The notes beneath the pieces are model-generated. The model saw nothing but the letters and a program-made list of their open reading frames with translations. It did not search any database and had not been told where the DNA came from. A stretch of DNA of 64,000 bases from Ylistrum balloti (Eukaryota), in the NCBI RefSeq assembly GCF_031769215.1, contig NW_026782845.1, positions 186,001 through 250,000 of the forward strand, written 5' to 3'. Shown here piece by piece: positions 6,272 through 39,600 of this stretch; the stretch's first letter is position 1, and each line of letters starts with the position of its first letter. The position numbers and the translations under genes were made by a program.

Positions 6272-9200
6272 ATGGCAGCAATGTCTACCGTGTGGTCTTT
6301 GAACCGCTACGCCAGATTTCGCCAACTACAGCAGACAGAGGGAGATACCGGGCCACCTTTTAAAGGAAGTTGGGAGGAGGTAACGCAATGTACTAGTGTG
6401 AAAAGAATCGATCTTCCTAATTTCCTTCACGCATTTTCTTTGCTGTTCCCGAATGCATCGATTTCGATGGGGGTTTTTTTTTCATATCGAAAAGTCATTT
6501 CCAAGTTTGCTCGTATATTAGTAACATTAAAAAAGGAAGGGCGACAACTTAAGCGGAGCTTTTCGTGTACATAGGCTCCTCATACATCTAGTTACTTTTC
6601 TACCAAACAGTGACGCTGTTACAAAGATGAAGTGTAAGGATATTTATACACGCTGCACGTATGTGTGAGCTGGGGATCGACTGTCCGAGGGATAGTCTGT
6701 TCTAAATGAGAAAATGTATTTAGGATGAAATGTGTTGACGAGTATACAGGGGCTATAAGCATGTTTCCAGCACTAATATCAGTATCACAAACCTCCTCCC
6801 CTCCCCCTTGAGAAAACATTGCATTTACATACAAAATGACTAGTATGGAGTATCGAGATTTGAAAAAAAAAAAATCTTTAAAGTAAATGTTGGTATCCGA
6901 CCGACATTGGTGCCCAAACGAAACCAGTAAGTTGTTCTCGCAACCAATGTCATTATATTTGACTTTTGTTTCTTCAATAGTATTGCGGGGACGAAAAACC
7001 ACTGAGAGCTGTACTTCACCAGGAAGGTCAATTTGTGCTGACGAGAGGTACAACGGTCATGGTAGGTTTCATTTTGAATATAGTGCTTTAAGTCCTTGTG
7101 TCCATGGTAGTACAGGTGACCTCGACCCCTCCATGTCCGAAAGGGAATCGAACACCGGTCACCGAGGTGAATGGCTAGCGTACTAGGATTGTGCCATCGA
7201 TCGCTCATATTTATGTGAATTTATATTTATTTTTACAGTTCAATATTGTCTATGATCAATTCATGCCCTACTTATGTATTAAGGGAGCTAATAAAATGAA
7301 ATGAGGCCAATGCGTAAATAAAAACAAATAAACGTGCACGTGATCATATATTTGTAACTTATATGGATGTTTGTACATTATCAGATAATGATGAATTATA
7401 CCAATACAATGCAGGAATCAATCCATTTGAGGACAGCTGGATCTTGGATTAGAGGGACGAGTAAGGGAGACAGTGTCCTGTTGGTATGCAAAATCAAGGT
7501 ATGCTGTGCTATTTGTAAGTTACCCTACATATCATAGTCTATCTACTTTGTGGCAGTATTTATATCGATAACATTAACAGACAAAACAGTGTGGTGGTTC
7601 AGTCACACACTCTTATTTCCATATTTCACTTTCCCAACAACAATTCCAAAGGTTCTAAAGGCGGATATGTCATTCAGAATAAGCTTTGCCACGTAATTAA
7701 AAAATGTTACGATATTAAAATTCCAATGACATGTGAACAAATGCTTTTAGTATATGAGTTTATTTTTAAAATGTCTATTTTCTGTGCCTATGTTATCGGT
7801 TTCAGGAAGAAACCCGCCGATTTAGAATGCAGTTTTCGAGCTGCAATGAACAAACAGATGTTAAGACATGTCAGGATTTCTCTGAAAAGATGTCTGCATA
7901 TTTTCCAATCAAAGTGCTTCAACTTGAAAAAGACATAAGAGAGGTGTGTTAGTGATGTCCCAAGTACTTTTAGCATTTTAAATCCAATAATAACAGAAGC
8001 TGAGGTACTATAATTGACCTACACCCGACCTATCGATCTACTTTCGATTAAATATCTTTGTGACTTAGTACCAAGCTGACCCAGCCTAATATTGACCTTG
8101 TCCCTAGCTGACATAACACCAAACTGGTCTAGCTAAGCTGGCGGTGTTTTAAAAACCAAACGTGACGTAAAATGTGCATAATCTTGCCCCAAACTGACCT
8201 AGTCAGGCAGGTGAAGCTTTACACCAAACGTGACATAATCAAGTGGGTGTTGTTTTATACCGCAATATGGCCTCTATAAAAGCTCCAGGATTTCTGTTGA
8301 AGATCAGCTTTCGCATCAGCGAAAAACAATACAATTTACCCGAGAGACGTCACCGTAGTAAAGATGTCGTTGACCATCAGTTTATTCGAAGCTGATGCAG
8401 GTTTGAGATAAGTTAAGGGGTATTTTAGATGTTGTTTTATATCCTAACTAGTAGGAAAACACTTTAAAATTCCTATGTAACTTTATGGGGGAAAAGAATA
8501 TTCTAACAAACCCGGCGTGAGTTCTCTCTGAGGGAAGACACTCTTCCTCAACTTATTGCGTCATCCATCTCACCAAAAATCTTCTGTAATTTCATTGTCG
8601 TCATTAAAACAAAACAAAGGCATGAATTCTGTTAGCGTTAAGGATGAAAAACCTGTTGTATGGTAATAGGCACATAACAGAACTAACTCTTTGATTGTTA
8701 AATGTCTCTTTAATAGTCTAAGATGACTGTCTTTGACTCCAGACCATCCTATATAAAATACTTTTCGAGCATAACGGCTCTCAAGATAGCATTTGAAAAG
8801 AGATTCGCGGTATATGTTGGGAAAACCGATGTTACATTTGATGAGTGGCACTTTCTGAAATGAGATGGTAATGCACATACGCGACCTAATGTAGAGTTGA
8901 TGTTTTCAGAATAAAGACACATGAGAGTTGTCTACAGTAATTATGTAACACATGTAAATCTATTATTTCCTTGGAGTGTACATGTAAAGTGCTGAAGACT
9001 GTTTTCCTTTATCTTGATTTGATGATTCGCGGTACAATCTCTTGGGGATTCGCGGTACAATCTCTTGGGGATTCGTGGTACGTTCTCTTGAGGATTCGTG
9101 GTCAATCTCTTGGGCATTTGATGATTCGCGGTACAATCTCTTGGGGATTCGCGGTACAATCTCTTGGGGATTCGTGGTACATTCTCTTGGGGATTCGCGG

Positions 9201-12144
9201 TTCAGTCTCTTGGGGATTCGTGGTACAATCTCTTGGGAATTCGCGGTACAGTCTCTTGGGGATTCGCGGTACAGTCTCTTGGGGATTCGCGGTACGGTCT
9301 CTTGGGGATTCGTGGTACAATCTCTTGGGGATTTGATGATTCGCGGTACAATCTCTTGGGGATTCGCGGTACAGTCTCTTGGGGATTCGCGGTACAATCT
9401 ATTTGGCATTTGATGATTCGCGGTACAATCTCTTGGGGATTCGCGGTACAATCTATTTGGCATTTGATGATTCGCGGTACAATCTCTTGGGGATTCGCGG
9501 TACAATCTCTTGGGGATTCGTGGTACAATCTATTTGGCATTTGATGATTCGCGGTACAATCTCTTGGGGATTCGCGGTACAATCTCTTTGGGATTCACGG
9601 TACAATCTCTTGGGGATTCGTGGTACAATCTCTTGGGGATTCGTGGTACAATCTCTTGGGCATTTGATGATTCGCGGTACAGTCTCTTGGGGATTCGCGG
9701 TACAGTCTCTTGGGGATTCGCGGTACGGTCTCTTGGGGATTCGTGGTACAATCTCTTGGGGATTTGATGATTCGCGGTACAATCTCTTGGGGATTCGCGG
9801 TACAGTCTCTTGAGGATTCGCGGTACAATCTCTTGGGGAATCGTGGTACAATCTCTTGGGGATTCGCGGTACAGTCTCTTGGGGATTCGTGGTACAATCT
9901 CTTGGGCATTTGATGATTCGCGGTACAATCTCTTGGGGATTCGCGGTACAATCTCTTGGGGATTCGTGGTACGTTCTCTTGAGTATTCGTGGTCAATCTC
10001 TTGGGCATTTGATGATTCGCGGTACAATCTCTTGGGGATTCGCGGTACAATCTCTTGGGAATTCGTGGTACATTCTCTTGGGGATTCGCGGTACAATCTC
10101 TTGGGGATTCGCGGTACAGTCTCTTGGGGATTCGTGGTACAATCTCTTGGGCATTTGATGATTCGCGGTACAGTCTCTTGGGGATTCGCGGTACAGTCTC
10201 TTGGGGATTCGCGGTACGGTCTCTTGGGGATTCGTGGTACAATCTCTTGGGGATTTGATTGGCAATCTTTGGGGATTCGCGGTACAGTCTCTTGATTCGC
10301 GGTACAATCTCTTGGGGAATCGTGGTACAATCTCTTGGGGATTCGCGGTACAGTCTCTTGGGGATTCGTGGTACAATCTCTTGGGCATTTGATAATTCGC
10401 GGTACAATCCCTTGGGCATTTGATGATTCGCGGTACAATCTCTTGGGGATTCGTGGTACAATCTCTTGGGGATTCGTGGTACAATCTATTTGGCATTTGA
10501 TGATTCGTGGTACAATCTCTTGGGCATTTGGTTTTTTTTGGTAATTCTCTTGAGAAATGATAGTTCGTGGTACACGCTTGGGGATTTGATGGTTCGTGGT
10601 ACAATGTACCGTTGGCTAATCTGTTTCTTGACAGGAATAATTCATGGTATGTTTTTCGGAAAATCATTTACCTCACGAGAAATTCATCACTAAATAAATA
10701 TTGTTTTCAAAAGGACTGACATTCTGCCTAAAAAAATATGTTGTGTCAAACTGGAAGTTACCTCCGTTGAGGTGAAGTATCATCAAATTTACCACAGTAT
10801 CTGCAATCATTCCACTACATTTCTATTCCACAAACATATATTTTCATAACAACATTTACTCAAAGTTTTATAAAACTTTCGAAGTAGGTATAAATGTATG
10901 TAGCAAATACTGAAAAAATAATTTAATCTGAAAGTTGAGGAGTATCTGTTATTCAGCCAAAAGCAAATTACAACACCCCAGATTTCAGGAATCAAGCAAA
11001 TTTTCTCAAAGTATTGTATTATATTATGTTATATTATATTATATTATAAGTTAAATGATGAAATTTATATTACATTATTATAGTAATACTTTCTTGAACA
11101 TAAAATTTTAGGTGTGAAATATGTCATTTGTGATACCATGGTAATATACTAATGATATATAACATTCTATACTGTTTCAGAACAAAAACAAAGAATCTGC
11201 TGAAAGACACGAGGCAAATCTCCAAGGGGAGGTTACTCTTTCGAAAATCGCCAAGGTTGGTATTTATCTTTAAGTTCTGACTGTCGATAAACTTAAATAA
11301 ATGTATATAGTACATACGACATGAACGCTATGTTTTAGAGAACAGCGGAGGTAGGAACATAACTTACGGCATGCAATCAAATGCACGTTAAGTACTTAGT
11401 CCGTTTCAAATAATATGCTCTGGTATATATACTGCATTTCAAACTTTACGTGGTTGTCAGGACTGAAATTGCTCTCTCTTGTATATTGTTGTTTTTCAGA
11501 ACTATTAACACGAGGTTCCGAATAAAATCAGGTACACTTCAAATGGTTTTTTGGTTAGAATGTATCAGTTAACGATATTAGTTGATATATTGGCGTCTTT
11601 CCATATTGTTATGCTTTTGTTATGTAGGCCTGAGTTGATGTGGCGACAGATGTACAAATACTTAAACTGGTAGTGAAAGTGAGAAACGAGTATATATTTC
11701 GCAAAAACGGCTATATCGTGCGAAAACTCTTATGAAAATAACTTCTAAACCTAAGACTACACGTGTACTAACAATTTCGAAAACAGTATACATACCGTTC
11801 ATGTTTACGGATTTTTTTCCAGAAAGTTAGAAGTTTTGAGCGAATCAAAACCGATTATAAAATGTGAATTAAGATATAACGAAAAAATATTGTAACAAAT
11901 GAATATAATACTTTTTAGATGTTGCATTTAATGTCTTATTTCTAGTATTAACATGACGTTTCGCATATTTTTAAAGGTTGTTACAAAAGAGGAAGAAGCC
12001 TCGTTCCCGGCAGCTTATCAAAACTGTTGTAATATACCGGGCGACCATTTAGAATTCATCTTACGTCTGTGTTTATCAGATCCAACATTTCCTGCATTTG
12101 TTGAACAAGTTGAACAAAAGTTGAATAAAATAAAGAACAACTGA
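6272..12144 (+). CDS. REC114: Meiotic recombination protein REC114, about 217 aa; exons 6272..6379, 6981..7061, 7415..7498, 7806..7943, 11181..11255, 11977..12144
   Basis: All introns are phase 0 GT-AG. Translation shows the REC114 signature motifs WSLNRYARF, ESIHL...WIRGTSKGDSVLL, RRFRMQF, GEVTLSKIAK and the C-terminal FILRLCLSDPTFPAFVEQVEQKL. Confidence 0.9.
9012..10620. repeat. About 1.6-kb minisatellite with a 23-bp unit GATTCGCGGTACAATCTCTTGGG and 31-bp variants (+CATTTGAT), in REC114 intron 4
   Basis: Directly visible tandem units. The six-frame ORFs here show 23-aa periodicity (three units). Confidence 0.95.
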
Positions 12145-12960: not shown

Positions 12961-13540
12961 ATGAACGATCAATTTGTGAAGCTAAGAAGAGAAAATTCTT
13001 TATCCCGACGACGAGTAATACGGTTTCAACTTTGTGAATGATTCACTTACTAGGATAGACATTATGAGACAACCAATGAAACTTAATTTTTTGAAGCATT
13101 ATTTGATCCTATAAGCATATGGTATCTACATTAATTTGGAATCTCCTTTTCGATCTGATCTTACGTGCACTGCTTGCTAAAAGCTGGGAAAGATAAATCA
13201 GATATAGGGCGAACGATAAATTGAAGAGAAGCTTACTAGGCGAAGAACTGACACACCCAGATGAGGAATACGTAATCTTTTGACAGACTTGTTCAATATG
13301 ATGATACAATTCTTATTGTACGAATTTACGATAGGGATTATTTTATTTTTTTTGACATTCTTAATAATAATTTCTTACATTCACTGCCTGAAAAATGAAC
13401 CTGAAAATTTTAAATATGAAACACACACACACACACCCACTCCCCCCCACCCCCCAATCCAAAAGACACATGTGAATATGAATTACACCTCAATTCAAAT
13501 TTATAATTAGATACAGAAGAGCCAAATAATGAATTTACTG

Positions 13541-14333
13541 CATTATACAGCAGTTTCGTCCTTCTGGAACTCGTCAGTGATGCTACATCATACAGCAGTT
13601 TCGTCCTTCTGTAACTCGTCAGTGATGCTACATCGTCCTTCTGGAACTCGTCAGTGATGCTGCATCATACAGCAGTTTCGTCCTTCTGTAACTCGTCAGT
13701 GATGCTACATCATACAGCAGTTTCGTCCTTCTGGAACTCGTCAGTGATGCTACATCATACAGCTGTTTCGTCCTTCTGTTACTCGTCAGTGATGCTACAT
13801 CATACAGCAGTTTCGTCCTTCTGGAACTCGTCAGTGATGCTACATACAGCAGTTTCGTCCTTCTGGAACTCGTCAGTGATGCTACATCATACAGCTGTTT
13901 CGTCCTTCTGAAACTCGTCATTGATACTTACATCATACAGCTGTTTCGTCCTTCTGGAACTCGTCATTGATACTTACATCATACAGCAGTTTCGTCCTTC
14001 TGGAACTCGTCAGTGATGCTGCATCATACAGCAGTTTCGTCCTTCTGGAACTCGTCAGTGATGCTACATCATACAGCAGTTTCGTCCTTCTGGAACTCGT
14101 CAGTGATGCTACATCATACAGCAGTTTCGTCCTTCTGTAACTCGTCAGTGATGCTACATCATACAGCTGTTTCGTCCTTTTGTAACTCGTCAGTGCTACA
14201 TCATACAGCTGTTTCGTCCTTCTGTAACTCGTCAGTGATGCTACATCATACAGCTGTTCCGTCCTTCTGTAACTCGTCAGTGATGCTACATCATACAGCT
14301 GTTTCGTCCTTCTGGAACTCGGCATTGATGCTA
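13541..14333 (-). ncRNA. Tandem array (18 units, 45 bp) of minimal type I hammerhead ribozyme motifs
   Basis: Minus-strand unit TAGCATCA-CTGACGA-GTTCCAGAAGGAC-GAAA-C-(T/A)GCT-GTA-TGATG. It contains the hammerhead core CUGANGA/GAAA, stem II closed by G-C, a 2-bp stem III with a palindromic loop, a GUA cleavage triplet and stem I CAUCA/UGAUG. Confidence 0.85.
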
Positions 14334-14412
14334 AGGGCCTAAAGTTCGAAGCCTAGGAGGCGACTAAGGGGAATCCAAAGTGATGAAAAGGAAAGTCAAA
14401 ATATAGACGGGG
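14332..14412 (+). repeat. Dispersed repeat (TAAGGGCCTA... family), copy 1
   Basis: Aligns by eye with 39101..39180 (taagggccta...gcc.aggaggcga.taagg..aatccaaa.tgat...aagtcaaaat..agac). Confidence 0.7.
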
Positions 14413-17400
14413 CTTCAAGTCCACCAGCTGTGTCTACCACCTGCTATCTTAAACTTTGTACGAAGGTCATGCATGTAAATATAGCCTTTAAATACTTCCG
14501 ATTAAGATAAAGCAGTGCCAATTAATGAATTCAAACTGTTTCGTCCTTTTACATGTATGACAAGCCAGTACAATATCAAAAGGCCTTTGGCACCGCGGAG
14601 GCTATATCAAAACCGACCAAAAGAAATGCCTATATCTAGATTGAGAGATGCACAAGCTTAATAATGCAGTAAATCACGGTAACATGCATATAAGTGTATC
14701 TGATAATTTCCAAACAACATCAAATATATGCGTATATTCTGAACCGTGCTATTATTCCGACAATTTGAAACTTGACAAGCAGGTTAAGGCAACCTCGGCA
14801 AAAAGTCCACCAGCAATGTCTATCATATACAGTTTCTAAGGTTGTACATAATACACACAAGTCAATAGCACCATTCAATACAATTTTAGAATTAGATACA
14901 GTAGATCCAAGCAATGAATCATATAGCTGTTTCATCGAAAAACGCATTAAGGGTTTGTTCGTAAATGGCACTTTCTACAACAGAAAATGAATGATATAAC
15001 CGTTCATTTGTCCTTTCCCTTATACAGCTATATTTTTGACAGGAACAGTTCCCCTTGTCAACTTTCAGAGTGGAAAAAAACCTAGTTGGTCTGGTCTATT
15101 ATTCATAAAAGAATCAAATCTGAAACGATACCGAAAGTCAAAACTGTTTTTCGTGATCTTGAAGTTAGGGCCTTGTTAATAATTTAATAATATGTTTTTG
15201 TGTATGTAGATAAGATACAGCGTATCTTATAATTTGATCCTTGTTTAGGAACACTATTTGCATTTAATGTATACAAAATGACTAGACATGCTCTTTAAAA
15301 AGGATATATCATCCACATTTTCCGAAGACACAGTACGAGCTAATCATTCTGATTGCCACATAAAGATCGGGGCGTTTCTCGTTTGTAATGAAATCCTATA
15401 CTTCATATGAATCGATGTAAACATTATTATCAAATTGAGATCACCACCGTTTATCTTCGGTACGGTGGACCGAATAGCTACCACAAAAGCGACAAATAAG
15501 CCCTTATCACTGCTAGCGTAATTGTTTAAATTTTTCTATATTGAATTTTCCATTTCTGGATAAGAACATTAATACATCCCCAATCTTTCGTATTTACACA
15601 TCAGAGTTGATTTGATATTCAAGACTTTATTCCCATTATCACGATTTTCGTCCAAAAATCGTCAACTGACGCATAAACTTGTTTCCAAAGATATAGGCTA
15701 ATAAGAAGTATGGTGCAGTTTTACGTTTGTAAAGTGGTCTCATTGAGAAATATTCTGGTGGGTTTTTTTGTACGATAAAAAAAGCTGGACGTGTTTGGTG
15801 CTCGTTTGTATGCCTGTTGGTTCCGTTGTTGTATACTTTGTACTCATTTAAAAATCAGATGCTTTTTTAAAATTTTTTCAGGAATCTTCGCCTAAATCTA
15901 TATTTTGTTCATATTTTGCTCTAGTTTTATTGAATCTGAGTTTGGTTAATGATTATTTTGACATGGTGGAATTTTAATGTTTTTCTTTTTCTGTCATTAG
16001 TTAAAGCCTGGCAGAATTTTTCACACTCATTACAGAAACATTACATCTGGAACGTATGTGAAAGTATTATGGTCGACCTAATCTAATTTCTTTTTTCCCT
16101 GTTTAATTTAGATGTGTTTAATGTTCGCAAGGTAAGCTGGTTTTGTGATTATTTATGTTCTTTTTTGAGAATGTCACATTACCTCATTTGTTTTCCCAAG
16201 ATTTACATTGCTAGTGTTGTCGATTAAGCAGAAACCTACCTTTCTAGCACATGGTCTTATTTCCCTCGTGCCTTGTTAAGGTTATTTAAATCTTGATTTG
16301 TTGATATGTTGTCCTCGTGTCATCGATTTTTTAACATGCGAGTTGTTATTTCATGCTGTTTTTATGTAAGCATTGTTCCATTTCGAAATAACTAGATGCA
16401 AACAAGAATTAATTTTACATTACATATCAGGAATAATTTACATATTCGGTAATTTCAGACATTACATACCATATATTGATTGTTTTGTAAATGCATGATG
16501 AGATAAAATGTTAATCATTCTTTATCCTGGCAAAACCAAGTACTAAATTTTCATTACCGGACGTATGAACAAACAATTTTGTTTGATTTTTTAATATTTT
16601 TTTTAACTTAAAGTTGTTAATGTATTCGGCTGAAGAGTATTATCCATCATTACATTGCAACGTAGCATATTGATTACAAGAGTTATGGAAGGCAACATTA
16701 AGTACGCTACTTTGATAGTATTATTCTCAGGATTTACCGTAGAAAGAAATTTCATGCGCTTAGCAGAAGATATCTAATGTGATTACAGAATATGTCAGGG
16801 GTGCAAGTCATCTTTGAAGACAGATCGTCAGTTAACGTGTCAGCAAATCTGTATTTTGCATCTTCATTTTGGATGATGGCGTGTGTTAAGGAATTTGGAA
16901 TTAGTTTTATTATTGATATAGTTAAGGTAACGCCCTATTCGTTCGAAGATGTGCTCTTATTTTGAAGATATTCCAAGATAAAAGTCATCAGATAACAAGA
17001 CAGAAGAAAAACTGTGGGACTCAATATTGCGAGTTATCGAGAATCTTGAGTCGTGAAATTTCAAACTATCCTGAAAGCCTTTCAACAAATTTGTCTCAAT
17101 CCTTTACACGCATGACTGGGTAAAGGTTATCATGTTTGACCTATATTTGACCTTTTCCTTAGATCAGTATTTGCCTATCACAAAAGTTAAACGAGCGTAT
17201 CAATATTCGACTTACGTTCGTCGTGTACAAAGTCATAACAGTTAGACCTAAATTCAAAGCTCTCCTTTGGAAAACTTGGTCTTATGTTTCATGTACCATA
17301 TCAAGGGTCTTCTTGAGGTTATATTTTAATTGGGTTTAGTTTCTTTTGTTATATTGCTAGAAATTGCTATTTCGCTAAATATAATTTTCGATCTAATCTG

Positions 17401-18099
17401 GCATTATTTTGGTTACGCTTCTGATACTGTTATGTTTCCGAATAATAGTACAGTGATTCTCTGATGATTGATCGTTCGTTTTCATGATCAGCCAAGTTAT
17501 GTCCATTGATGTAGAGAAGAGGCTTACTGAGGTTTAGAATATCAATACGTCTGTAAGATATGGTTCTCCTTTTGTGCAGTTCCATGAAAATAATACATTA
17601 AACATTAGGTTGTGTGTTGACCAAAGAATGGAATACAATGTTATACATTCGTAACACAATTCATCAATCATAATGACATGACATTAATAGTCAAAATCAT
17701 GAGATGTGCTTAGTGAAACTTATCTTTTAAATGGAATAGATCACATTGCCGAGGATTAGACAGTAATCTCCCACGTGGTAGAAAAAAATCTGCCCTACAT
17801 TCAGGATAAATCACTAATCTCCGAGAAGGCAAACACATCTCTGTTGTACCCTAAAGTTAGGGAATGATTCCTTTATCTGCCCAACCCAACATAATTCAAT
17901 AAAACATAGATTAAATCGAATTTATTGATTAAGTGAAAGAGCTTGCTGCACAGGACGTACTTGTTCGAAAAAAAGATTAAGACATTCTATACTGTAGCAC
18001 TGATACTAGATATTATTGATGCTGTGCGCTTCTTGTATCTTCTACGAAATGATAACACCAGCGTTACCTTAAACTCTTGAATAACCTGAAACGAGGGAC

Positions 18100-18285
18100 T
18101 GTATGTGTGAAACGAAGGACGGTATGTCTGAAACTTGGGGTTGGTATTTCTGAAACGAGTTTGAGAATTTCTGAGACGAGGGTCGGTATCTCTGCAACGA
18201 GGGTCGGTATCTCTGCAACGAGGGTCGGTATCTCTGAAACAAGAGTCTGTATCACAGAACCGGAGGTCTGTTACTGAAACCAATG
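18100..18285. repeat. Short degenerate 21-bp tandem repeat (GAGGGTCGGTATCTCTGCAAC), probably internal to a non-autonomous TE
   Basis: Three near-perfect units plus degenerate flanking units. They produce the RDTDPRC-repeat ORF artefact. Confidence 0.7.
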
Positions 18286-19728: not shown

Positions 19729-22565
19729 ATGAATTCATCAATTTATGCAAATATTTGTTATCAGTGTTATTCTGGCACCAAAGATCAGAACTACTTCCGG
19801 AAAGGTGTGTTGCAGGCTACCGCTATTTTCATGCTTATCCTAGCAACATTTGGATTGCTTTTTAATAGTTTGTTCATATACATTTTACTTACACACAATA
19901 TCGTGAAGACCAGAAACAATATTTACGTCATAACACTTTGTGTCTCAAGTATCATGATCGCAGTTCTTGTGGTTCCGACGCTTGGTGTGTCGTCGTTGGA
20001 GGATAAATGGGTGTTTGGAGAAGTTGGGTGTACGTTACATGGCTTTATCATGACAACGTTTGGACTTTTTCAAATATTTGTTCTCACCGCTATGTCGGTC
20101 GAAAAATATATCATAGTGGTCAGAAACCATTGGGACTCATTTGTGTCAAAAAAGGGGACCCGCTTCACCACTGGATTGTGTCTGGCGTTGGGGTGTTTAC
20201 TTGGGAGTTGTCCACTCTTTGGGTGGAACTCTTATAAACTGGAGCTTCAAAAAACGTCATGTTCCATTGACTGGGCCGATAAAAGTAGGAAAGCGCTTTC
20301 CTACACGTATCTACTGATTATAATTGGACTTGTGGTTCCTGTTTCGGTGATGCTTTTCTCGTATATAAATATATATTTCCAGGTAAGTAGGTACTCCATG
20401 TGTCACAAATACCTGTTTGATACAATTATTGTTCAATTGCGTGATTTAATCTTTATTTTTTAAAATCACATATAATTGCCTGCTATTTTCAACCTTAACT
20501 ATCATCTTATTCTGAGGCGGAGAAATTACACTCATTTCATGTTTAAAAAGTATTTTATGGCCATGCCAGGAACGAAGAAACGATCATCCTAAGGTAGTAA
20601 GGATGACAACCGAAGGCTGCGATTCCGAAAGTCCCCCTTTACACAACCGATGAATGATTATTTTGACTGTTCCACAGGTACAGTTGTACAATGTAGCAAC
20701 AAAGCAACTTTTAATACCATGATATATCGACGTAGAGAGAAATGTCGTTTGGCATACATAATGACAATATTAATTGAGTAACAAGCAAATTCATGGAATT
20801 TATATTCCAAGCTTTCCAAACATATTGTAAGTAAATATTTAGTGTTTATTATATTTAGGAAAGTTAGAGCACAGACACTGACCGACCAATGAAATGAAAG
20901 GATACCTAATTAGTATGCATATACATGAACAGATGATGCTGATTGCTAAACTCAGTCTTATGTGCCCTAATATGTATCTGCTGATCAAGTTTCATCTAAA
21001 TCGGATGATATTTGGGGAAGTTAGAACACGGAAACGAAAGTGTGACAGATAGACGGACGGATAGACAAACCCTAATTAATATTCCTCGTTTCGGTGCGGG
21101 GGATAATGAAAGTCAAACTTGGTAATGTAATGATCTGAAATGATATGATAAGAAAAGCATCGCTTTTGTGCTATTGAAATAATATTTTTGCTTTATTAAG
21201 ATTGGTGAGTCTTATGCCTATATATACAACTTACATATATTATGTTTAGACCATAAAAATATCTTACTGTTTGCATACAAATTTGGTCAATTATAGAGCA
21301 AGCTTTAGCATAACTTTTATTAATGATGAAACAGGTTCATATCTCTTGTGCACTTCTTTTCAAGCCAGGAGAAATGTTTTTTATGTCACCGGATCGACAG
21401 ATCGAGGCGTTTTGTCTGTCTGTTTGACTGTCTGTTCGTTTGGCTTTCATACTTGGAATGTGTGTTGCTTGTGACAAGACCTTTGCAGTGGTATCAATTG
21501 TTTTGACCATGTGAACTTGACGTGACGTTTGAAGGTGTATATAGCTGTCGAAGTAAAACTGTCAAATCATTATCACAATGAATACATAAATGTTTCCCAA
21601 AGTGTGTATGCAATAGGGCCTATTAGCACATGCCTTATGTTAAAAATATCTTTTGCAGATTAAAGGTCATATATTCAATTTACGCAAGGTGTTACGTAAC
21701 AGCGGGAAGTGTTATGCAAATATGCTGAAGAGAGAGGTCAAAGTCATCAAAACCATGTTTATTCTTGTTTGTAAGTATTTTCTTAATGGGAATATTCCAT
21801 GGCACCACTACCTTACTCCCTCTACCCCTCGACCTTTGACCTTCCTATTGTACTAGATAATTCTTCCCAAAATGTCGACATTCACCACTAAACATGCTTA
21901 TCATTAAGCATTAATTTAAAATTTTCATTAAATCGTCTGAAATACAAAGTTTGACATTTTGGTTATTATTCACATGTTTGATACTTGTGCTATATATTTA
22001 GATGTTCATAATATTCACGTTCCTGGTGTTTTCGGCGAAGTAGAAGACACTTATCATGTAGGAACGCATCACAGTCAATCTTCGTTAATTCGAAGTTGGC
22101 GGGACGTTGGGAAACTTCGAATTAAACGGGTTTCTTCGATATCACGAGTTTCGACTGTATGTCGTTCTCATTGTTGCATGTTAGTAAAACTGTTTTCTTT
22201 GTGTTATAGGTGCCTTCATTGTCTCCTGGGTTCCATACGCCACTATTTCTTTATATGCTATGTTCAACGATATCAGCTTAATGAACCCATTGCTTTATAT
22301 GTTGCCGACACTGTTCGCGAAAGCTTCTGTCATCTGGAATCCGATCATATATATGTTTATCAATAAGGCATTCAAAAATGCCCTTATGGAAAAAATACCA
22401 ATATTAAGGAAATGCCGCATATGTAAGCGTTCCAAAATACAGAACGAGCTTTTAAGTAATGAAACCATACCTAGCCCTACATATAGCAAAGATTCCAAAT
22501 CATATGATCACCGACACACAGTCAGAATGTCAAGTCCAACCCACGTTGCCATCACAATGCTGTAA
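19729..22565 (+). CDS. Opsin paralog 1 (rhodopsin-family GPCR, probably xenopsin-like), about 373 aa; exons 19729..20382, 21659..21770, 22210..22565
   Basis: 7TM profile; WVFGEVGC (Cys110 equivalent), EKY (DRY-like), YKLE..KTSCSIDW (Glu181/Cys187), PTLFAKASVIWNPIIY (retinal-binding Lys296 and NPxxY). GT-AG introns, phases 0 and 1. The subfamily assignment is inference. Confidence 0.92.
20930..21106. mobile_element. Helentron-associated/HINE-like non-autonomous element end
   Basis: GACAG/GACGG microsatellite-like run followed by a terminal stem-loop (attcctcg...gcgggggataa), the architecture known for bivalve Pearl/HINE-type elements. Confidence 0.45.
22075..22159. mobile_element. Right end of a Tc1/mariner-like MITE (...cgagtttcgactg + TA) in opsin 1 intron 2
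   Basis: Same terminal sequence as the element at 40211..41394. Confidence 0.5.
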
Positions 22566-25500: not shown

Positions 25501-26995
25501 GGTTTATCTCAATTTGCCTCACTTTCGTTAAGTGAGTCCATGTGCCATTTGCCAAAATATTCAAATCGAATAAAGACTGTTTTTATTTTCATCGTACAAA
25601 GCAGACTCACTTAGATTCTGATGGAACATACATATAACATAGTCGACAACACAGTCCAACAGATATTTCTAATGAGGGAATTTTGCTGTTGTTATTTTGC
25701 ATACTTATAATTCGGATAGGAATGTATTTCCATTCAGCGTTAAATGCTTGGGACAGCTTCTGCAGGTTTGACAGCTGATTCTGACGTTTTCTCACGCATT
25801 ACTCAGGCGCACAAACAGGCTCAATTAGAAAAAAATCAGGTGATTTCAATGACCAGTCTAACACCTGCACATTATTCTGAATTCTGATGTAGGGAAGTTC
25901 TGCTGACTTGTGTACCTGTGCCTGCTCCTGTTGGAACATGGCGCCAACGTCATGTCTTCTCAGAATAGTAAAATCACTGGCCTTAAATTGTCATCCCGAG
26001 ATCTTATTCTGGTTCAAGTGCTATTTACAATGTACTACAACTAGTCTGGTACAATTTCTCTCATCAAAAAAGATGATGACCTTGTTTTATTTAAGCGACT
26101 AAACAATTCTTTTAATGGTAATGGAATAAGCGTAAAATTGATAAAAAACATAAGATTTGTTGAGTTCTGAGAAAATATGGAACAAGTATCATTATTATTT
26201 TTATGAAATGTAAACTAATATACATTAAGTTGCAGAAATCTTTGTGATTGGGGAGCTCTTCTGTTAATATGGATTTTACACGCCTGAATTATTTAAATTT
26301 TTAATGCAAACTATTGTTGCTGTTTTGTTCTATTGCATACACACTATTTTGTTATCACTTATTTCTTGGGATGCACCAAGAAAACAAAAGACCAAAAAGT
26401 GAATTACTTTTTCATACAAATTTCGAGTTAGATACAGTAGAGCTGAACATTGAATTAAACTACCTTTCTTTCTCGTTTGATATATGCTTAACCGTGCGAC
26501 GAATACATCGATAATTTTAAAAACTGACATCTGTTAACTACGTTGCAAATATTTTCAATAATCAATGCTTATCTTAGTTAAGGCTCAATGTTCAGCAAAT
26601 CATGATTTAATGGAACAACGTGCATTTTTTTACTTAACATTTTTCTCTAATAATCGTATCTTATAAATGATTCTTCACAAATCGCGTGGTTGGTGTGAAT
26701 TATAGTCATTTATGGATTTTTCTTAACCGCATTGTTGCGATCTGATGATCGATTTTCTTTTTCCCCCGGCATCTACGTCATTAAAAGGTGTTGTCACACC
26801 ATATAAAGACCTACCTAGTGCAGAGCAGTCTGCTAATAGCTAGTTAGTCGCCGAAACAACTTGAGAGGAGCGATTCTGTTTCAATTTGAATTGTAAAAGC
26901 ACATTTGGCACTTATCGTGATGCAATTGGGGAAATCTTATATATCTAAGTAATAATAACTCTGTTTCAGATACTTAAAAAAATCAACGTTTCAAG

Positions 26996-30365: not shown

Positions 30366-30636
30366 CACTCTCATTATATAATAGCGACGAAACAGCGGCA
30401 GTGGGCGGAAGTTTTATTATCGCTTACCATGAATTACACTCTCATTATATAATAGCGACGAAACAGCGGCAGTGGGCGATACAGCGAAGGCAGTAGACGG
30501 AAGTTTTATTATCGCTTACCATGAAGTACACTCTCATTATATAATAGCGACGAAACAGCGGCAGTGGGCGATGTCACAAATACCGTCAACGGAAGTGTCA
30601 TAATAGATTACCATGAATAACATTTTCATTATATAG
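30306..30636 (+). repeat. Four-unit tandem repeat (92/71/92/about 76 bp) covering the opsin 2 C-terminus and stop codon
   Basis: Units start with GCAGTGGGCG at 30306, 30398, 30469 and 30561. Confidence 0.9.
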
Positions 30637-32975
30637 AATGTCAACGCACTTTTTTAACAAAATTTCCGTCTGGGATGTTCTATGTTGTATCCTAGTGGAA
30701 AATTTATGACTCCCAAGCAACTTGATATGTAAGCATAAATAATACTCACTTAATTTACAGCTCTTATTTCAATAGAAGTTCTACAACGGGTGGCAGCTGG
30801 TTATGATCGTTATCTAACACGAGTAATGAACAAACGAGAGTTCGAAAAGGATGATAATCAACTGCCACGAGTTATAGACCTTCTATCTACCATTACCTTT
30901 TAATGTAAAAATAGATAAATTGTGTACAACATTGTTTCGCCCCCATTAACACTTTCGCGTAAGAATACATCGTAAGTTGTCTAATTGGTTCACAAAATCG
31001 CTATAATTTGGAAGCAAAATACTTATTTATTCAGTAATCTTGTTTGGAAACATCCCGTAACATTAGCTCATTGCAACACGTTACAAAATTACACAAATTG
31101 TTAATCTTAAAAAAAGATAATTTGGGACTAGATTTTATTGCGGATAAGAGTAGTGCTTCGTCGCGGGAAAATGTGAATGCAGAAACGATTATGATGACGT
31201 GTAATTTTGGGGCTGAGTTTCTAACGCTCTTTGCGGTGTTTCCTTGGGACTCAGCTGTACATTGAAGTTGAAGATCATTTGATACTGAGATATTGTCGGA
31301 AATGGGGCGGGGTTCAGCGGTAGGCCTAGTTGACACAGTGACGATAGGGTCAGGGGAAATGTCAAACCTGTATCTTGATTCCGAAACGACATTGCCCGTC
31401 TCCAACCTTATATAAAAGATTGAGAAACCAGAACTACTGCATTTACCAATTACTATCCCCTTTCCTACTCCACAGTTTTACTGCATCACCGATCTTGACC
31501 GCCGGCAAGAGTGACAGGTCGTCACTGTCAGCCATGTTGATGATGGACAGCACTTGGCGAAAGTAGTTTAGGGTCACAGATCATGGTTGGGTCAAATGTC
31601 AATGCCTCGTCCTAACGATTTGGCTGTCACCAATAATACACGTGTGTATTTTGCGTATGAATAAACAATGGATATGGTGTTTAATAAATAGTCTGGACGT
31701 AAGATAATATTCGCAGGTTATGGTAGAAACAAAAGTAAAACTTTTCTTTTTAAAAACAATGAACAAAGTTCAACTTGTTACTATAGTCAGTCATAGACGT
31801 GTTTACGAGGAATACAAAAGAGTTACATCCATTCATGTTGAGTGACATGTCCATCGATAACGATGTTTCAAAAGTGCAACATTGTAGCCACATGGAAAGG
31901 GAAACGTTTGTCATTAGTAGACAGAATAAAACCCAACAACTGAATTCTAGTGTCCACCTTCATAATTTCCAATGATAAATCATCAATGATTTTCATGCAA
32001 ATATTGCTGTGACCTGCCCTATCGCTTGTTGTAATCGACCTTTAAAAATCAAATCACGAAAATTATTCAGATGAACGGTATGCTTTAAATAGTCTAGACA
32101 ATGCTTTTTCTGGCGATATAAATTTGGTATTATATTTATGTCATTTATAGATTGCTCTTTTAGAAAGTCGATGTTGATATTAATGTTGCTCCAAGTTCCT
32201 CTAACTTGACTAAACGCTAAGTGCATATGAACCCAAAACGTCACTATGATGTTGGTAGTGAAATGTATCAACGAGATCAATTTCTGTTAAGCCTGCACCT
32301 GGTAGGACATGATGAAATTAAGGCATGGAATAAGACATGATGTATTTTTAACAATAAAATCTGTGTATAGTTGACATAATTGCAAGTATCCATTTGTTAA
32401 ATTGAATATGAAACTGTTCTTGATGAGACCAACTCACAAAACGAAGACATTCCCTGAAAAACTGAATAGCGATAAGTCACTGGAAAGAGCTTTTAAATGA
32501 CGATTTTAACCCAAATTTTCCTGATGCCGGAAGGTTGGTTTGGTTATAAATTTTCAATGCCTGTCATCCACAGTGTTGTCGTTAAAAAACCTCATCTGAT
32601 TTATTGAACTTTTTCCACGTGAAAGTGTTCATCTCGGCAAAATATCCAGTAACCAGATATAAGTACTCACAAAAGGCAAAATAGGCCCTGTAGCACTACC
32701 TGGTGATGAGGACGTGCTGAGAATCATAGGCATTCACACTTATCTTATACGTGGTTCCCAGAAGCCTTTCTCTAAATTGGGGAAATCTTTGTCCATGGGA
32801 AACATGTCTAGAAGTATTTATTTCAATACCATGGTGAACATTCAGGCCAAACTAAAATCTGGTTTAGGATTTTTTGATAAATTTTTGGTAATATTCAAAA
32901 TACTGTACAAGGGATACACAAGTGAATAGCACCATTAAATACAAATTTAGTTAAGATGCAGTAGAGCCAAACAAT

Positions 32976-33215
32976 GAAGTACATCAGCTATTTCATCCTT
33001 CTAAGGCTGGTCTTATTTAACTCAATAATTTTAGTAAGACAATGTAAATATGTATCATTTAAGTCAATATTTTTAGTATGACAATGAATTAAACAATGAA
33101 TTAAAGTACGTCAGCTATTTCATCTTCTAAGGCTGGTCTTATTTAACTCAGTAATTTTAGTACGACAATGTAAATATGTATCATTTAAGTCATTATTTTT
33201 AGTGCGACGATGTAA
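32976..33215. repeat. About 130-bp tandem duplication
   Basis: The block aagtac.tcagctatttcatc...ctaaggctggtcttatttaactca... occurs twice. Confidence 0.8.
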
Positions 33216-36675: not shown

Positions 36676-39600
36676 TTAAAGTAAATCTTCTTTGGATAGC
36701 ACAGGTGTCGTCCGCAATTCAACATGTATATGACTGCAGTGTTGATCAAATATCAAAATCTGGAAATGAAAATGACACCGTATGGTAATTTGCCAATACA
36801 ACCAAAATATCGTTTACAAAAAACAATAATTCATTGAAACGACTTTGTTTCTAATTGGTTTCAATAATTCTCACTCTTAAAGATTTGATAGAAAATCATG
36901 AAATCTATTCAACAACACAGAAGACATGCTCAGGAAATCATTGTCGTTTTCCGGATATATGTCACTGCTAAAATCAATCTTCTTCCACTAATATATTTGA
37001 CCTTCCCATCTTTATGCTTTATAAAGACTTTTAATCAATGTTTGCTGTGAAGATGACGATAATGATCCTGCAGTATTCGAAAGCGACAACTCTTTTGTTA
37101 CATATCCATAAGCTGTATATACCTTAATATTCTTAAGGATTGCAATATAGATTACTGTTAAAACATTAATTTTCATTAGTGAACCTTGTTAGCCAGATGT
37201 ATCCATAAACGTTAACGAGAATGTACATGTGTAGAAAACCATGAAATTTTAGCCCAACGAAAATACATTATTTTTACATTATCATATCATATTAAAGTGT
37301 CATGCTGTTTCCTTTTTTTCTTTAGTTGATATCATTGAAGGCTTTAGAGGGATTTTATATTTTCTGGTCTACCTCATTTTGATGTGATTTTAATCGAGTC
37401 TTTGGCAAATATAACGTCATCAGAGGTCCTTTGTTCCAGTATCGACCTAGGTTGAAACCGTTAATCACCACGAATCCCTTACACCAGTCCTAGAAAACAT
37501 AAACATCCAATTACTATTTTCTGGTTTACGTTTATCATCATATATGCGAAGATGTACATTTTAAACATAATTTAGCCATGTTTTTGGATCATTCACGAAC
37601 AGTTTCTAGTATATATATGTAAATATATGTTGAAATTTGATCACGTAAAATACATTGTAGCATTTCTTATCTACGCATGTAATATATGGAGTTAATTATC
37701 ACTTAATATAACAAGGGGTCAGAGGTCACCCGCCATATTGTTTTTATAATAAGTGGTGATCTGAACATAAATTATTAAAGTATTACACTAAGTTAATGAT
37801 TCTAATCAAGTTTGAATTATTTCCAATTAAACAATATTGCCAATTTTATTTCTTATACAAATTGTGATAAACTCCGTGGTCTAGAACGCAGTTTGGAGTG
37901 GCATCGTTATATCTTTCCAACAAGAATTATTGTATCATACTTTATTTGTGTCTTTAAAATTAATTTATCAAGTTTACTCCTCTTAGCACCACCTGGCAAG
38001 CTCTGCGGGGCTAGCTAAGGTAACTTCATTCAAACGGTCAAACTTTCATCCAGAAAATTCACATCATGTTCGCAATTTTCCAACGGCAACTAAACAAAAT
38101 CGTTTAAATGTTCAACTTTTTCATATAAAACAAACTTCACCCTCCACTACTAAAGGGAAGTTGAGATCCACGGGTCACACTTTGTGTTATGAATCATAAT
38201 ACCTATAATGTTCAATGGTATCATTTTCTTGCATGAACTATAGTAAACTTCACTTTAAGAAGAGGAGTATTGAAATTGAAACTTTTGATCTCTTTGTTCC
38301 TTAAATCAGAGTATCTTTGACGCACCACGCACGACGATAGCGACTAGAATAGGTAAAATGAAACTTCATTTCGGATGGCAGTGTCAGGTAGATTTTTTTA
38401 TCGCATGTAAAAAAACTCTGCACATCTGAAATACGGTGTGGAGTTTATAATCACTTAAAATAAAAAAAAAATTTTGATGTGGAGATTCTATTCACAAATT
38501 TAAGATGTGTTGCTGATTTTGTATTACAAAATATGAAATATTGTATGATGTTTCTTATCTACAAATATAAGATGCAATTTGAATTCACTAATCATCACAT
38601 AGAAAAGACATTGGATCCAGGTTTGGTAAGATCTGTTCAACATTTTCATTCAGAAAATATGAGGAAAAATTTTAAAAACCATCAGCTGCAGTCACATACC
38701 TTCATCCATAGGAACGTATCTGTTAAGTCACCGGTAATATCAAAGCGTCCTCTATATAGTGTTGGTGTTGTCCTGTTAGAATTCCCAAGAGTAGACCATG
38801 TACCATTCGCCTGCGTTCTACGAGCATTAAGTAAGGATAAACACACTTTAAACACAGAAGGAAACGCGCTGTTGTGTTGATAAATGTTTAATTTCACCAG
38901 AAACGTCTGTATCTGTCATGGTTTTGATTGAATAAGTCATTTGTTTTGTTAGATAATGTGCTGTGTTTGCCCAACCTATACTGATTGTACAAAAATCGTA
39001 CAAGTGAATTGCATCTTTAAATGATTTATAGTTACAGTAAAGATGTAAAGCCAAACATAAAGTAAACTGCATCACACACATGTGTCGTTCATCGACGACC
39101 TAAGGGCCTATATTTTGAGGCCAAGGAGGCGATTAAGGAAAATCCAAAATGATAACAAAAAAGTCAAAATCCAGACATGGAGGAGGAAACTGCCAAATAA
39201 TTAAATAAATTTCATAATTTTCATATATCAGATGATTTGATAATAGTGCCAAGTATCAACTATGTTTTGCTATTTCGTTTTAAAGAAAGTCATACTTCAT
39301 GTACGTCGTCACGTGACCATGCAGTATAACATTGTATTGTATGGGGACGTGTCAGTTACAACGCTGTCTTAGAAGGCCGTCACGTCAACATAATTTCCAC
39401 GTTTCACTATTTGCACTATTTTCCAGTATTGCTGTGCCATAGTATTGTGAAAAAATATTTGCCCCACATTAATATCACACCAACACCTCGGGTCAGATAA
39501 TTTTTACTTTATAGCAGGTAGGCATAGAATATCTCTATTTTATATTAGTATATAGTACATTACATATGATAAAATGTTAGCACAATAAAATATCCAGAGA

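What the first reader, a model, noticed from the sequence alone, without database searches (positions are those of the whole stretch)
13541..14333. A satellite made entirely of hammerhead ribozymes: 18 head-to-tail 45-nt minimal type I HHRs
Seen in sequence: on the minus strand each unit reads GCAUCA-CUGACGA-GUUCCAGAAGGAC-GAAA-C-(A/U)GCU-GUA^UGAUG. The catalytic core is complete, stem I (CAUCA/UGAUG) flanks it exactly, the G10.1-C11.1 pair is present and the triplet is GUA. Several units have the self-complementary stem III ACAGCUGU, and the others have ACUGCUGU. Established knowledge: minimal type I hammerheads with very short, palindromic stem III are associated with Penelope-like elements and can cleave as dimers (double hammerheads). 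Inference: here the ribozyme is essentially the whole repeat unit with only about 3 nt of spacer. A minus-strand transcript could self-process into 45-nt monomers or oligomers, possibly circularisable, like an ultra-minimal retrozyme. It could also act as a multi-site cleavage cassette for antisense read-through toward the REC114 3' end. Most variation falls in the stem II loop (GGA/GTA/GTT/GAA) and stem III loop, while a few units have broken cores (CAAUGACGA, GGAA, one deletion).
Basis: partly seen in the sequence, partly recalled or inferred. Interest (0 to 1): 0.92.

Follow-up and report, generated by a model that had tools for sequence, protein, structure and literature searches.

The report
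Hammerhead-ribozyme minisatellite in a scallop
A 0.8-kb stretch of scallop DNA is 18 head-to-tail copies of a 45-base self-cutting RNA motif, most likely a mobile element's ribozyme expanded at the DNA level and now drifting; the repeat unit shrunk to the ribozyme alone is unusual.

Summary
Window 13541-14333, minus strand, holds 18 tandem 45-bp units, one cut to 32 bp. Each unit is a hammerhead ribozyme (HHR) plus a 3-nt linker. Eleven units keep a complete core and stems; seven are broken.

The genome is the scallop Ylistrum balloti. The array lies between REC114 and two opsin genes, antisense to both. The syntenic Argopecten locus has no HHR.

The array fills, in phase, the ribozyme slot of a short dispersed HHR-bearing element that resembles a retrozyme. 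Both arms recur beside a single decayed slot at 38990-39180.

In an array the workable fold is type III, built across neighbours. Stem I is closed by UAG, and stem III forms between successive ACNGCUGU palindromes. A type I dimer of adjacent units would be a pseudoknot with 3-nt linkers.

Several results argue against selected function here:
- Mutations do not spare the core.
- A stem III-weakening U variant fills half the units.
- The predicted HHR fold probability is at most 1e-4.
- A 45-nt circle is predicted to be unstable.

Verdict: a real HHR-derived minisatellite, most likely a neutral DNA-level expansion. First readers noted the same 45-bp arrays on other pieces of this genome; those notes are unchecked. 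I found no published description of such an array.

The parts
13541..14333 (-). 45-bp tandem array of 18 hammerhead units. Each unit is a 3-nt linker, stem I 5' arm CAUCA, core CUGACGA, stem II, GAAA, the ACNGCUGU helix III element, cleavage triplet GUA and stem I 3' arm UGAUG.
13715..13765 (-). Best-scoring type III hammerhead formed across two neighbouring units. Stem III has 6 bp plus one U.U mismatch, stem I is 5 bp closed by UAG, and stem II is 4 bp. An equal hit lies at 13847-13897, and one with a perfect 7-bp stem III at 14206-14256.
   Evidence: 40.2, 40.2 and 39.0 bits; HHR fold -8.0 against MFE -8.6 kcal/mol
14244..14333 (-). The two units at the 5' edge of the array, both with broken cores: u0 (C3 to A, A6 to C) and u1 (A13 to G).
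   Evidence: 67.9 and 71.8 bits
13885..13975 (-). Two adjacent units (u8, u9) that share C3 to A, a 1-nt insertion in the linker and a C to U change in stem I. They look like a locally duplicated dead pair.
13631..13662 (-). Truncated 32-nt unit. A 13-nt deletion removes GAAA, helix III and the cleavage site.
   Evidence: 30.3 bits
14334..14570 (-). Unit B of the host element. It has a decayed hammerhead (about 14535-14590, core reads CUGGCUUG) followed by a 237-nt tail. The tail's last 75 nt form the left arm abutting the array.
   Evidence: (tail B positions 163-237 match 39103-39176 at 80%, E 6e-13)
14571..14960 (-). Unit A of the host element. It has a hammerhead relic (only the GAUGAAACAGCU part is recognisable) plus a tail, and lies about 390 bp from unit B.
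   Evidence: weak hit at 14917-14973
13470..13540 (-). Right arm (tail C). It directly follows the last unit, is homologous to the tails after relics A and B, and is cut short after about 75 nt.
   Evidence: (84% to 14875-14919)
13421..13455 (-). (G)n(GT)n microsatellite where the right arm ends.
   Evidence: read directly
38990..39180 (-). Single-slot copy of the same element: left arm, one decayed ribozyme slot ending in GAUGCAG, then right arm. It shows what the locus looked like before the array expanded.
32916..33170 (-). Two decayed copies of the hammerhead 3' half, about 131 bp apart; the downstream one is followed by the right arm. A further right-arm fragment lies at 26400-26456.
11974..12138 (+). 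Last coding exon of the REC114-like gene, convergent with the ribozyme strand and 1.4 kb from the array.
   Evidence: 78% identity to the Argopecten REC114-like exon
19732..20385 (+). First large coding exon of the downstream opsin (7tm_1), 5.4 kb from the array.

Best explanation
The array is a minisatellite born from the hammerhead module of a short, non-coding, dispersed element of the scallop Ylistrum balloti. That element resembles a metazoan non-LTR retrozyme.

Origin. At this locus the 45-nt module (3-nt linker plus complete ribozyme) was duplicated in place, between the element's left and right arms, and grew to 18 units. Growth was by DNA-level processes: slippage at the YAG trinucleotides bracketing the ribozyme or at its hairpin and palindrome, followed by unequal exchange. 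The in-phase position between both arms is shown. The mechanism of growth is inferred.

Action if transcribed. A minus-strand transcript would let neighbouring units cooperate. UGAUG-UAG-CAUCA closes stem I, GUUC/GGAC forms stem II, and the ACNGCUGU element of one unit pairs with that of the previous unit to give a 5-7 bp stem III. The result is a type III-like hammerhead that would cut after GUA and release 45-nt pieces. Sequence competence is shown for about 10 junctions. Cleavage is inferred, not shown.

Current state. The units appear to be drifting rather than maintained, so this copy is most likely a by-product without a host function.
For: - Array and motif are real.
- Both flanks continue the host element in phase. 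The left arm matches 39103-39176 (80%, E 6e-13). The right arm matches the tails at 14875-14919 and 32916-32997. The copy at 38990-39180 has a single decayed slot between the same arms.
- Relics A and B lie 390 and 237 bp apart, within the 150-450 bp reported for metazoan retrozyme repeats and close to the mussel's 350-390 bp (PMC7229834).
- Signs of DNA-level growth: runs of identical neighbours (u1-u3, u5-u7, u8-u9); all four haplotypes of the two common polymorphisms; degenerate edge units.
- The window holds several other minisatellites with periods 21, 23, 31 and 71-92 bp.
- Bivalve genomes are known for short arrays carried inside non-autonomous elements, and a palindrome near the unit junction has been proposed as a hotspot (PMC7492417, PMC3879986).
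- Drift: core positions mutate as often as the rest (3 of 12 against 6 of 33 columns), and there are three disruptive deletions.
- The derived U variant at 15.3 weakens stem III in half the units.
- The HHR fold is never the MFE, and its ensemble probability is 1e-4 or lower even for nascent chains.
- A four-unit minus-strand transcript has z = 0.0 against shuffles.
- The feature is absent from the syntenic Argopecten interval, and the core motif is absent from 76 kb of three other scallop loci.
Against: - The repeat unit coincides exactly with a complete ribozyme. First-reader notes, which are unchecked, report the same 45-bp period at many other loci of this genome, with up to about 105 copies. 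Independent neutral births would not be expected to repeat the same phase.
- Eleven of 18 cores are still intact, and the two common polymorphisms sit only at non-core positions.
- With about 12 mutational events, the test for core sparing has little power.
- Nearest-neighbour folding ignores hammerhead tertiary energy and co-transcriptional kinetics.
- Relics A and B are so decayed that the tandem-retrozyme reading of the host element rests mostly on the tails. Their RNAs are not unusually structured (z -0.91 and -0.13).
Confidence: 0.68

Rival explanations
1. Adaptive duplication inside the mobile element. A single retrozyme-type hammerhead with a 2-bp helix III cannot cut alone. Duplicating the module places a partner 45 nt away and creates a self-sufficient type III-like ribozyme. 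Element copies carrying two or more modules would then process better and spread, and long arrays would be an overshoot of that advantage.
For: - Neighbouring units give Rfam Hammerhead_3 hits that beat the type I reading (40.2 against 28.2 bits). Their geometry matches the RF00008 consensus: 7-bp stem III, 5-bp stem I with a triloop and 4-bp stem II.
- Canonical metazoan HHRs are stated to need a second copy nearby (PMC4209133).
- Unchecked notes mention arrays with shared flanks at other loci.
Against: - Two units would be enough, so 18 are unexplained.
- The stem III-weakening U variant has spread through the array.
- Cores decay at the neutral rate.
- The predicted fold probability is very low because a 17-nt G.U-dependent quasi-palindrome at each junction pairs between neighbours.
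Confidence: 0.15
2. Ultra-minimal retrozyme. The 45-nt unit is itself the mobile agent. Transcripts self-cleave into 45-nt monomers, these are circularised, and a Penelope-type reverse transcriptase copies them by rolling circle. The resulting multimeric cDNA seeds arrays around the genome.
For: - The unit equals one closed three-way junction with no spare nucleotides.
- The same period is reported at many loci in unchecked notes.
- Rolling-circle models are proposed for non-LTR retrozymes (PMC7229834; bioRxiv 10.64898/2026.07.22.740005).
Against: - At this locus the array is in phase with both arms of a longer element, and its ends are not at the cleavage site.
- A 45-nt circle is predicted to be essentially unstructured, and the closed HHR fold is unfavourable at +3.3 to +3.9 kcal/mol. 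[quoted passage not shown]
- The variant pattern is blocky rather than uniform.
- No array-derived sequences turned up in protein or metagenome collections.
Confidence: 0.08
3. Host-level regulatory cassette. The array cuts antisense transcripts running from the opsin side toward the REC114 3' end.
For: The geometry fits. The ribozyme strand is convergent with REC114 and lies 1.4 kb beyond its stop codon.
Against: - The syntenic Argopecten interval, with the same gene order, has no hammerhead and no 45-bp repeat.
- Cores are decaying.
- There is no evidence of transcription.
- The same arrays are said to occur at unrelated loci.
Confidence: 0.03
4. Chance resemblance. The array is an ordinary minisatellite whose unit merely looks like a hammerhead.
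For: All Rfam scores are below the gathering thresholds. The copies are not independent, so the array counts as one observation.
Against: - All 12 invariant core positions plus the three core-adjacent pairs are present in one 45-nt unit.
- E is 3e-5 for the whole window.
- The same element family carries hammerhead relics at other places in the window.
- Bivalves are known hosts of HHR repeats (PMC7229834).
Confidence: 0.02

Closest known systems
Metazoan non-LTR retrozymes, for example the Mytilus galloprovincialis 350-390 bp repeats (Cervera and de la Pena 2020, PMC7229834)
   Same: - Bivalve host, AT-rich and non-coding.
- Tandem or dispersed repeats that carry a hammerhead with a 4-bp helix II and a 2-bp helix III capped by a palindromic tetraloop.
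- The host element here has units of about 237 and 390 bp.
   Different: - The array monomer is 45 bp, roughly a quarter of the smallest reported retrozyme (about 170 nt). It contains nothing but the ribozyme.
- Neither the array RNA nor the neighbouring units are predicted to be highly self-paired.
- No circular RNA data are available.
Classical hammerhead satellites: newt satellite 2, Schistosoma Sm-alpha, cave-cricket pDo500
   Same: Tandem genomic repeats in which every monomer encodes a hammerhead. Helix III is weak, so multimeric transcripts are needed for cleavage.
   Different: Those monomers are about 330-500 bp, with the ribozyme as a small part. Here the ribozyme is the whole monomer, and neighbouring units share their helix III strands.
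Penelope-like element pLTR minimal hammerheads (Cervera and de la Pena 2014, PMC4209133; Lunse et al. 2017)
   Same: Palindromic helix III region and the logic of dimer-dependent cleavage.
   Different: - PLE min-HHRs have a long helix II (7-8 bp), an extra unpaired base before helix II and often no loop 3.
- They lie in pLTRs next to an RT/GIY-YIG ORF.
- None of these features is seen here.
Double-hammerhead processing of multimeric viroid-like RNAs (Forster et al. 1988, as cited in PMC4209133)
   Same: The active helix III exists only when two ribozyme copies lie on one transcript.
   Different: Here the copies are immediately adjacent. One nested type III fold forms per pair of neighbours, and each helix III strand can serve either its upstream or its downstream ribozyme, but not both at once.
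Tandem-repeat-containing non-autonomous elements of bivalves (DTC84 and pearl MITEs, Cg_HINE Helentrons; PMC3879986, PMC7492417)
   Same: A short central array sits between conserved arms that recur at other loci. A palindrome lies near the unit junction. A microsatellite lies close to one array end.
   Different: Terminal inverted repeats, Helitron-type ends and target-site duplications were not examined at this locus. The repeated module is a ribozyme.

Membership tests
Hammerhead ribozyme (Rfam clan CL00010) | Invariant core C3 U4 G5 A6 N7 G8 A9, G12 A13 A14, A15.1-U16.1 and H17 | tested here: met
   Complete in 13 of 18 units. u0, u1, u8 and u9 carry core substitutions and u15 lacks the 3' half. 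Two of the 13 have stem I deletions, leaving 11 intact ribozymes.
Hammerhead ribozyme (Rfam clan CL00010) | Three helices with standard pairs next to the core (G10.1-C11.1, U1.1-A2.1, A15.1-U16.1) | tested here: met
   Read directly. The criteria are those of Perreault et al. 2011 (PMC3088659). Helices are I 5 bp, II 2-4 bp, and III 2 bp within one unit or 5-7 bp across neighbours.
Hammerhead ribozyme (Rfam clan CL00010) | Score at or above the Rfam gathering threshold | tested here: not met
   RF00008 best 40.2 against 48.5. RF00163 best 28.2 against 34. E-values are still 1e-6 to 1e-3.
Hammerhead ribozyme (Rfam clan CL00010) | Self-cleavage after H17 | not testable with these tools
   This needs in vitro transcription. 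Thermodynamic prediction gives the HHR fold a probability of 1e-4 or less, but that model ignores tertiary contacts.
Metazoan non-LTR retrozyme | Tandem repeats of about 150-450 bp, each with a type I hammerhead | tested here: not met
   The array period is 45 bp. The host element's units A and B (390 and 237 bp) fit the size range, but their ribozymes are decayed.
Metazoan non-LTR retrozyme | Monomer RNA that is highly self-paired | tested here: not met
   z-scores are -0.13 (unit B) and -0.91 (unit A). A four-unit array transcript has z = 0.0, and the 45-nt circle has an MFE of -0.5 to -1.4 kcal/mol.
Metazoan non-LTR retrozyme | Expression as small circular RNA | not testable with these tools
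   No transcriptome data were reachable. Searches with the array's open frames found nothing.
Penelope-like element pLTR hammerhead | Location in the terminal repeat of an element encoding RT and GIY-YIG | tested here: not met
   None of the 16 ORFs of 120 aa or more that were scanned against Pfam (of 24 listed; the other eight were not scanned: six overlap the 23-bp minisatellite and two span the N run) hits RT or GIY-YIG; only 7tm_1 is found.
Penelope-like element pLTR hammerhead | Min-HHR architecture: helix II of 6-8 bp, a bulged base before helix II, minimal or absent loop 3 | tested here: not met
   Helix II is 4 bp with no bulge, and helix III is 2 bp with a 4-nt loop. The descriptor is from PMC4209133.
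Bivalve tandem-repeat-containing non-autonomous elements | A central array between arms that recur at other loci | tested here: met
   The left and right arms recur around a single slot at 38990-39180. Right arms also occur at 14875-14919, 32916-32997 and 26400-26456.
Bivalve tandem-repeat-containing non-autonomous elements | Defined element termini with a target-site duplication or Helitron-type ends | not tested
   The outer ends of the element could not be fixed from the few decayed copies in this window.

The most novel reading that the evidence does not exclude
The 45-nt unit is the smallest self-sufficient retrozyme-type replicator. Tandem duplication has turned a partner-dependent type I hammerhead into a chain of type III hammerheads. 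These cut themselves into ribozyme-sized RNAs, which are recopied by reverse transcriptase, possibly by rolling circle. The copies reinsert or convert resident ribozyme slots, and this would explain why the same 45-bp period recurs at many loci of this genome.
Probability: 0.08. Interest if true: 0.88.

Novelty: new variant of a known kind. Interest (0 to 1): 0.52.

Why it matters
Hammerhead-bearing satellites and retrozymes are known, but their monomers are 150-500 bp and the ribozyme is a small part of each. Here the monomer is the ribozyme and nothing else.

This gives a natural example of how tandem duplication converts one hammerhead topology into another. A type I motif with an unusable 2-bp helix III becomes, with its neighbour, a type III motif with a 5-7 bp helix III. 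Such a route has been proposed for permuted ribozymes only by analogy (PMC10085705).

The case also links ribozyme-bearing mobile elements to the way bivalve genomes breed short satellites inside non-autonomous elements.

If the arrays prove to be transcribed and processed, they would set a lower size limit for retrozyme-like RNAs. They would also offer a compact natural multi-cleavage cassette. If they are not, the case is a useful warning: a complete ribozyme motif in many copies can be a neutral product of DNA repeat dynamics.

Tried and rejected
1. Fishing for related arrays through their open reading frames. Because 45 = 15 codons, three frames stay open.
   - The search for homologous proteins with the minus-frame ORF and the plus-frame ORF gave no hit.
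   - phmmer against 1.84 billion representatives gave only low-complexity look-alikes.
   - The best candidate, P0012, was fetched as L003. It is a 48-bp repeat without a hammerhead.

2. Scans of public collections.
   - Exact scans for the stem II/core string found nothing in metagenome or viral contigs.
   - A looser stem I/core pattern gave 9 single hits, none followed by the 3' half of the core.
   - These collections hold little animal DNA, so the blank says little.

3. Non-coding alignment between the Ylistrum and Argopecten intergenic regions, tried in order to delimit the insertion. Only the REC114 exon aligns.

4. Coding potential of the array. There are no Pfam hits and no homologues, so this was rejected.

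5. A weak model hit at 46552-46597. Read directly, it is not a hammerhead.

6. Literature searches for a ribozyme-only satellite, for scallop hammerheads and for the unit sequence itself found nothing relevant. Lunse et al. 2017 is not held in the library.

7. A type I double hammerhead between adjacent units. Rejected on topology, since it is a pseudoknot with 3-nt linkers. This is inference, not computed in 3D.

Full report
**What is there.**
The minus strand of window 13541-14333 is a head-to-tail array with a 45-bp period. A covariance model built from ten intact units recovers exactly 18 units. Seventeen are 42-45 nt as matched by the model and one is a 32-nt stump. Nothing elsewhere in the 64 kb is significant.

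Read 5' to 3', each unit consists of:
- a 3-nt linker (UAG, twice CAG);
- CAUCA;
- the core CUGACGA;
- a 13-nt stem II hairpin;
- GAAA;
- the element C-N-GCUG-U;
- the cleavage triplet GUA, whose GU is the 3' end of that element;
- UGAUG.

All invariant hammerhead positions and the three core-adjacent pairs are present. Rfam places 12 hits on this strand and none elsewhere in the window. They are significant by E-value (1.4e-6 in 3 kb, 3e-5 in 64 kb). All lie below the curated gathering scores.

**Which hammerhead?**
The best Rfam hits are to the type III model (34.6-40.2 bits) and not to type I (20.8-28.2 bits). In those alignments stem I is the hairpin UGAUG-UAG-CAUCA. Stem III is formed between the C-N-GCUGU of one unit and the AC-N-GCUG of the next.

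This is the only nested way for adjacent units to supply the long helix III that a 2-bp helix III with a palindromic tetraloop cannot give alone. A type I double hammerhead of adjacent units would need crossing helices bridged by 3 nt. I regard that as sterically implausible; this is inference from the known Y-shaped fold.

Each helix III strand is shared by two potential ribozymes, so only alternate ribozymes can be folded at one time. Ten junction-defined ribozymes are canonical. Their stem III has 7, 6 or 5 pairs, depending on whether position 15.3 of the two partners is A or U.

**State of the units.**
Eleven units are intact in the type I reading. The others fall into three groups:
- core substitutions: u0 (C3, A6), u1 (A13), and u8 with u9 (a shared C3 change);
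- 3-nt deletions in a stem I arm: two cases;
- a 13-nt deletion removing the 3' half: u15.

Nine columns carry substitutions. Three fall in the 12 invariant core positions and six in the other 33, so the core is not spared. The two common polymorphisms are at stem II position 10.4 (C9, A7, U1) and at 15.3 (U9, A7). All four combinations occur, often in runs of identical neighbours.

The decayed relatives elsewhere in the window carry A at 15.3. U is therefore probably derived, and it weakens stem III.

**Folding.**
For isolated 52-nt junction segments the hammerhead fold evaluates at -1.2 to -10.4 kcal/mol, against an MFE of -6.3 to -13.8. It comes within 0.6 kcal/mol of the MFE only at two junctions.

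In multi-unit contexts, and in nascent chains ending just as stem III is completed, its ensemble probability is 1e-3 or lower (1e-4 or lower for nascent chains). The main competitor is a 17-nt junction segment, UGCUGUAUGAUGUAGCA. It is a G.U-dependent quasi-palindrome on this strand only (duplex -14.4 kcal/mol, against -5.6 for the complement) and it pairs between neighbouring junctions.

A four-unit minus-strand transcript is no more stable than shuffled sequence (z = 0.0). A 45-nt circle has an MFE of only -0.5 to -1.4 kcal/mol, with the closed three-way junction at +3.3 to +3.9.

These numbers omit tertiary stabilisation and folding kinetics. They argue against efficient cleavage but do not exclude it.

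**Context.**
An opsin ORF in the window is 100% identical to a Ylistrum balloti protein, so the genome is this scallop. The gene order is:
- REC114-like, plus strand, last coding exon 11974-12138;
- the array, minus strand;
- two opsins, plus strand.

The same gene order exists in Argopecten irradians (L001). Its interval has no hammerhead and no 45-bp repeat. The 52 kb fetched from Pecten maximus and Mizuhopecten yessoensis also lack the core motif.

**The host element.**
Directly 5' of the array lies a 237-nt segment, unit B. It begins with a decayed hammerhead, and its last 75 nt recur at 39103-39176. Further 5' lies a 390-nt unit A with another relic. Directly 3' of the last unit lies a tail shared with the sequences that follow relics A and B and with copies at 32916-32997 and 26400-26456.

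The copy at 38990-39180 shows the undisturbed arrangement: left arm, one decayed ribozyme slot ending in GAUGCAG, then right arm. The array therefore occupies the ribozyme slot of a short dispersed element, in phase at both ends. It begins with the slot's UAG linker. It ends with UAAUG-CAG before the right arm.

The unit sizes fit metazoan non-LTR retrozymes (150-450 bp; mussel 350-390 bp; PMC7229834). The ribozyme architecture fits the canonical metazoan type described in PMC4209133, not the Penelope min-HHR. None of the 16 ORFs of 120 aa or more scanned against Pfam (of 24 in the window) carries an RT or GIY-YIG domain. Units A and B are not predicted to be unusually structured. I therefore call the host retrozyme-like, not a proven retrozyme.

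**Most likely history and mechanism.**
The in-phase flanks, the blocky variant pattern, the degenerate edge units, the neutral-looking mutation spectrum and the several other minisatellites in the same window point to in-place tandem amplification of the ribozyme module at the DNA level.

Bivalve genomes are known to carry many short arrays inside non-autonomous elements, and a palindrome near the unit junction has been suggested as a hotspot (PMC7492417, PMC3879986). The hammerhead supplies such features: the CAGCTG palindrome and the TGATG/CATCA inverted repeat.

If the minus strand is transcribed, neighbours could form type III hammerheads and cut after GUA. That step is inferred.

**Open question.**
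First-reader notes from the same scan report the same 45-bp ribozyme arrays on other pieces of this genome, with up to about 105 copies and some with shared flanks. They also report a dispersed family of about 230 bp, retrozyme-like pairs, and minisatellites born inside other mobile elements.

These notes are unchecked, and the sequences could not be reached with the tools. If they hold, either an array-bearing element spreads, or the ribozyme module is a recurrent hotspot, or an RNA-mediated route exists. The flanks at this locus argue against the last as the origin here.

**Literature.**
Searches of the held library found hammerhead satellites and retrozymes with monomers of 150-500 bp, Penelope min-HHRs, and bacterial clustered hammerheads. 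They found no satellite whose monomer is the ribozyme alone, and no scallop hammerhead. The library is incomplete, so this is not proof of novelty.

Noticed in passing
window 9023-10605: A 1.5-kb minisatellite with a 23-bp unit (about 65 copies, 46/77/100-bp higher-order periods). It lies upstream of the last REC114-like exons, presumably in an intron, and creates many overlapping spurious ORFs.
   Followed up: partly
window 63611-64000, 55180-55391, 18086-18253: Further minisatellites with 23-bp, 31-bp and 21-bp units. The window is generally rich in short arrays.
   Followed up: no
window 30335-30635: A tandem repeat of 71-92 bp whose unit contains GCGACGAAACAGCGGCAG, reminiscent of a hammerhead 3' half. 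No CUGANGA partner was seen and there was no Rfam hit.
   Followed up: partly
window 32980-33170 (minus strand): Two decayed copies of the hammerhead 3' half, about 131 bp apart; the downstream one is followed by the right arm. This suggests a shorter tandem variant of the same element family.
   Followed up: partly
window 13421-13455: The host element's right arm ends at a (G)n(GT)n microsatellite. Some Penelope-like elements are reported to insert at (CA)n or (C)n repeats (PMC8557442), and bivalve MITEs link arrays to a microsatellite (PMC3879986).
   Followed up: no
window 19732-22562 and 26978-30236; L001, L002, L013: Two tandem opsin paralogues (melanopsin-like / Gq-rhodopsin-like) lie next to REC114. 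The arrangement is conserved in Argopecten irradians, and the opsin pair is also present in Pecten maximus and Mizuhopecten yessoensis.
   Followed up: partly
L001 18678-21048: Argopecten irradians carries a 29-bp minisatellite of about 82 copies between the two opsin genes. It is unrelated to the hammerhead array.
   Followed up: no
window 13628-14342, both strands: Because 45 is a multiple of three, the array keeps three frames open and yields ORFs of 85-130 aa. These have no homologues or Pfam domains, but gene callers could mistake them for repeat proteins.
   Followed up: yes
   Followed up: no
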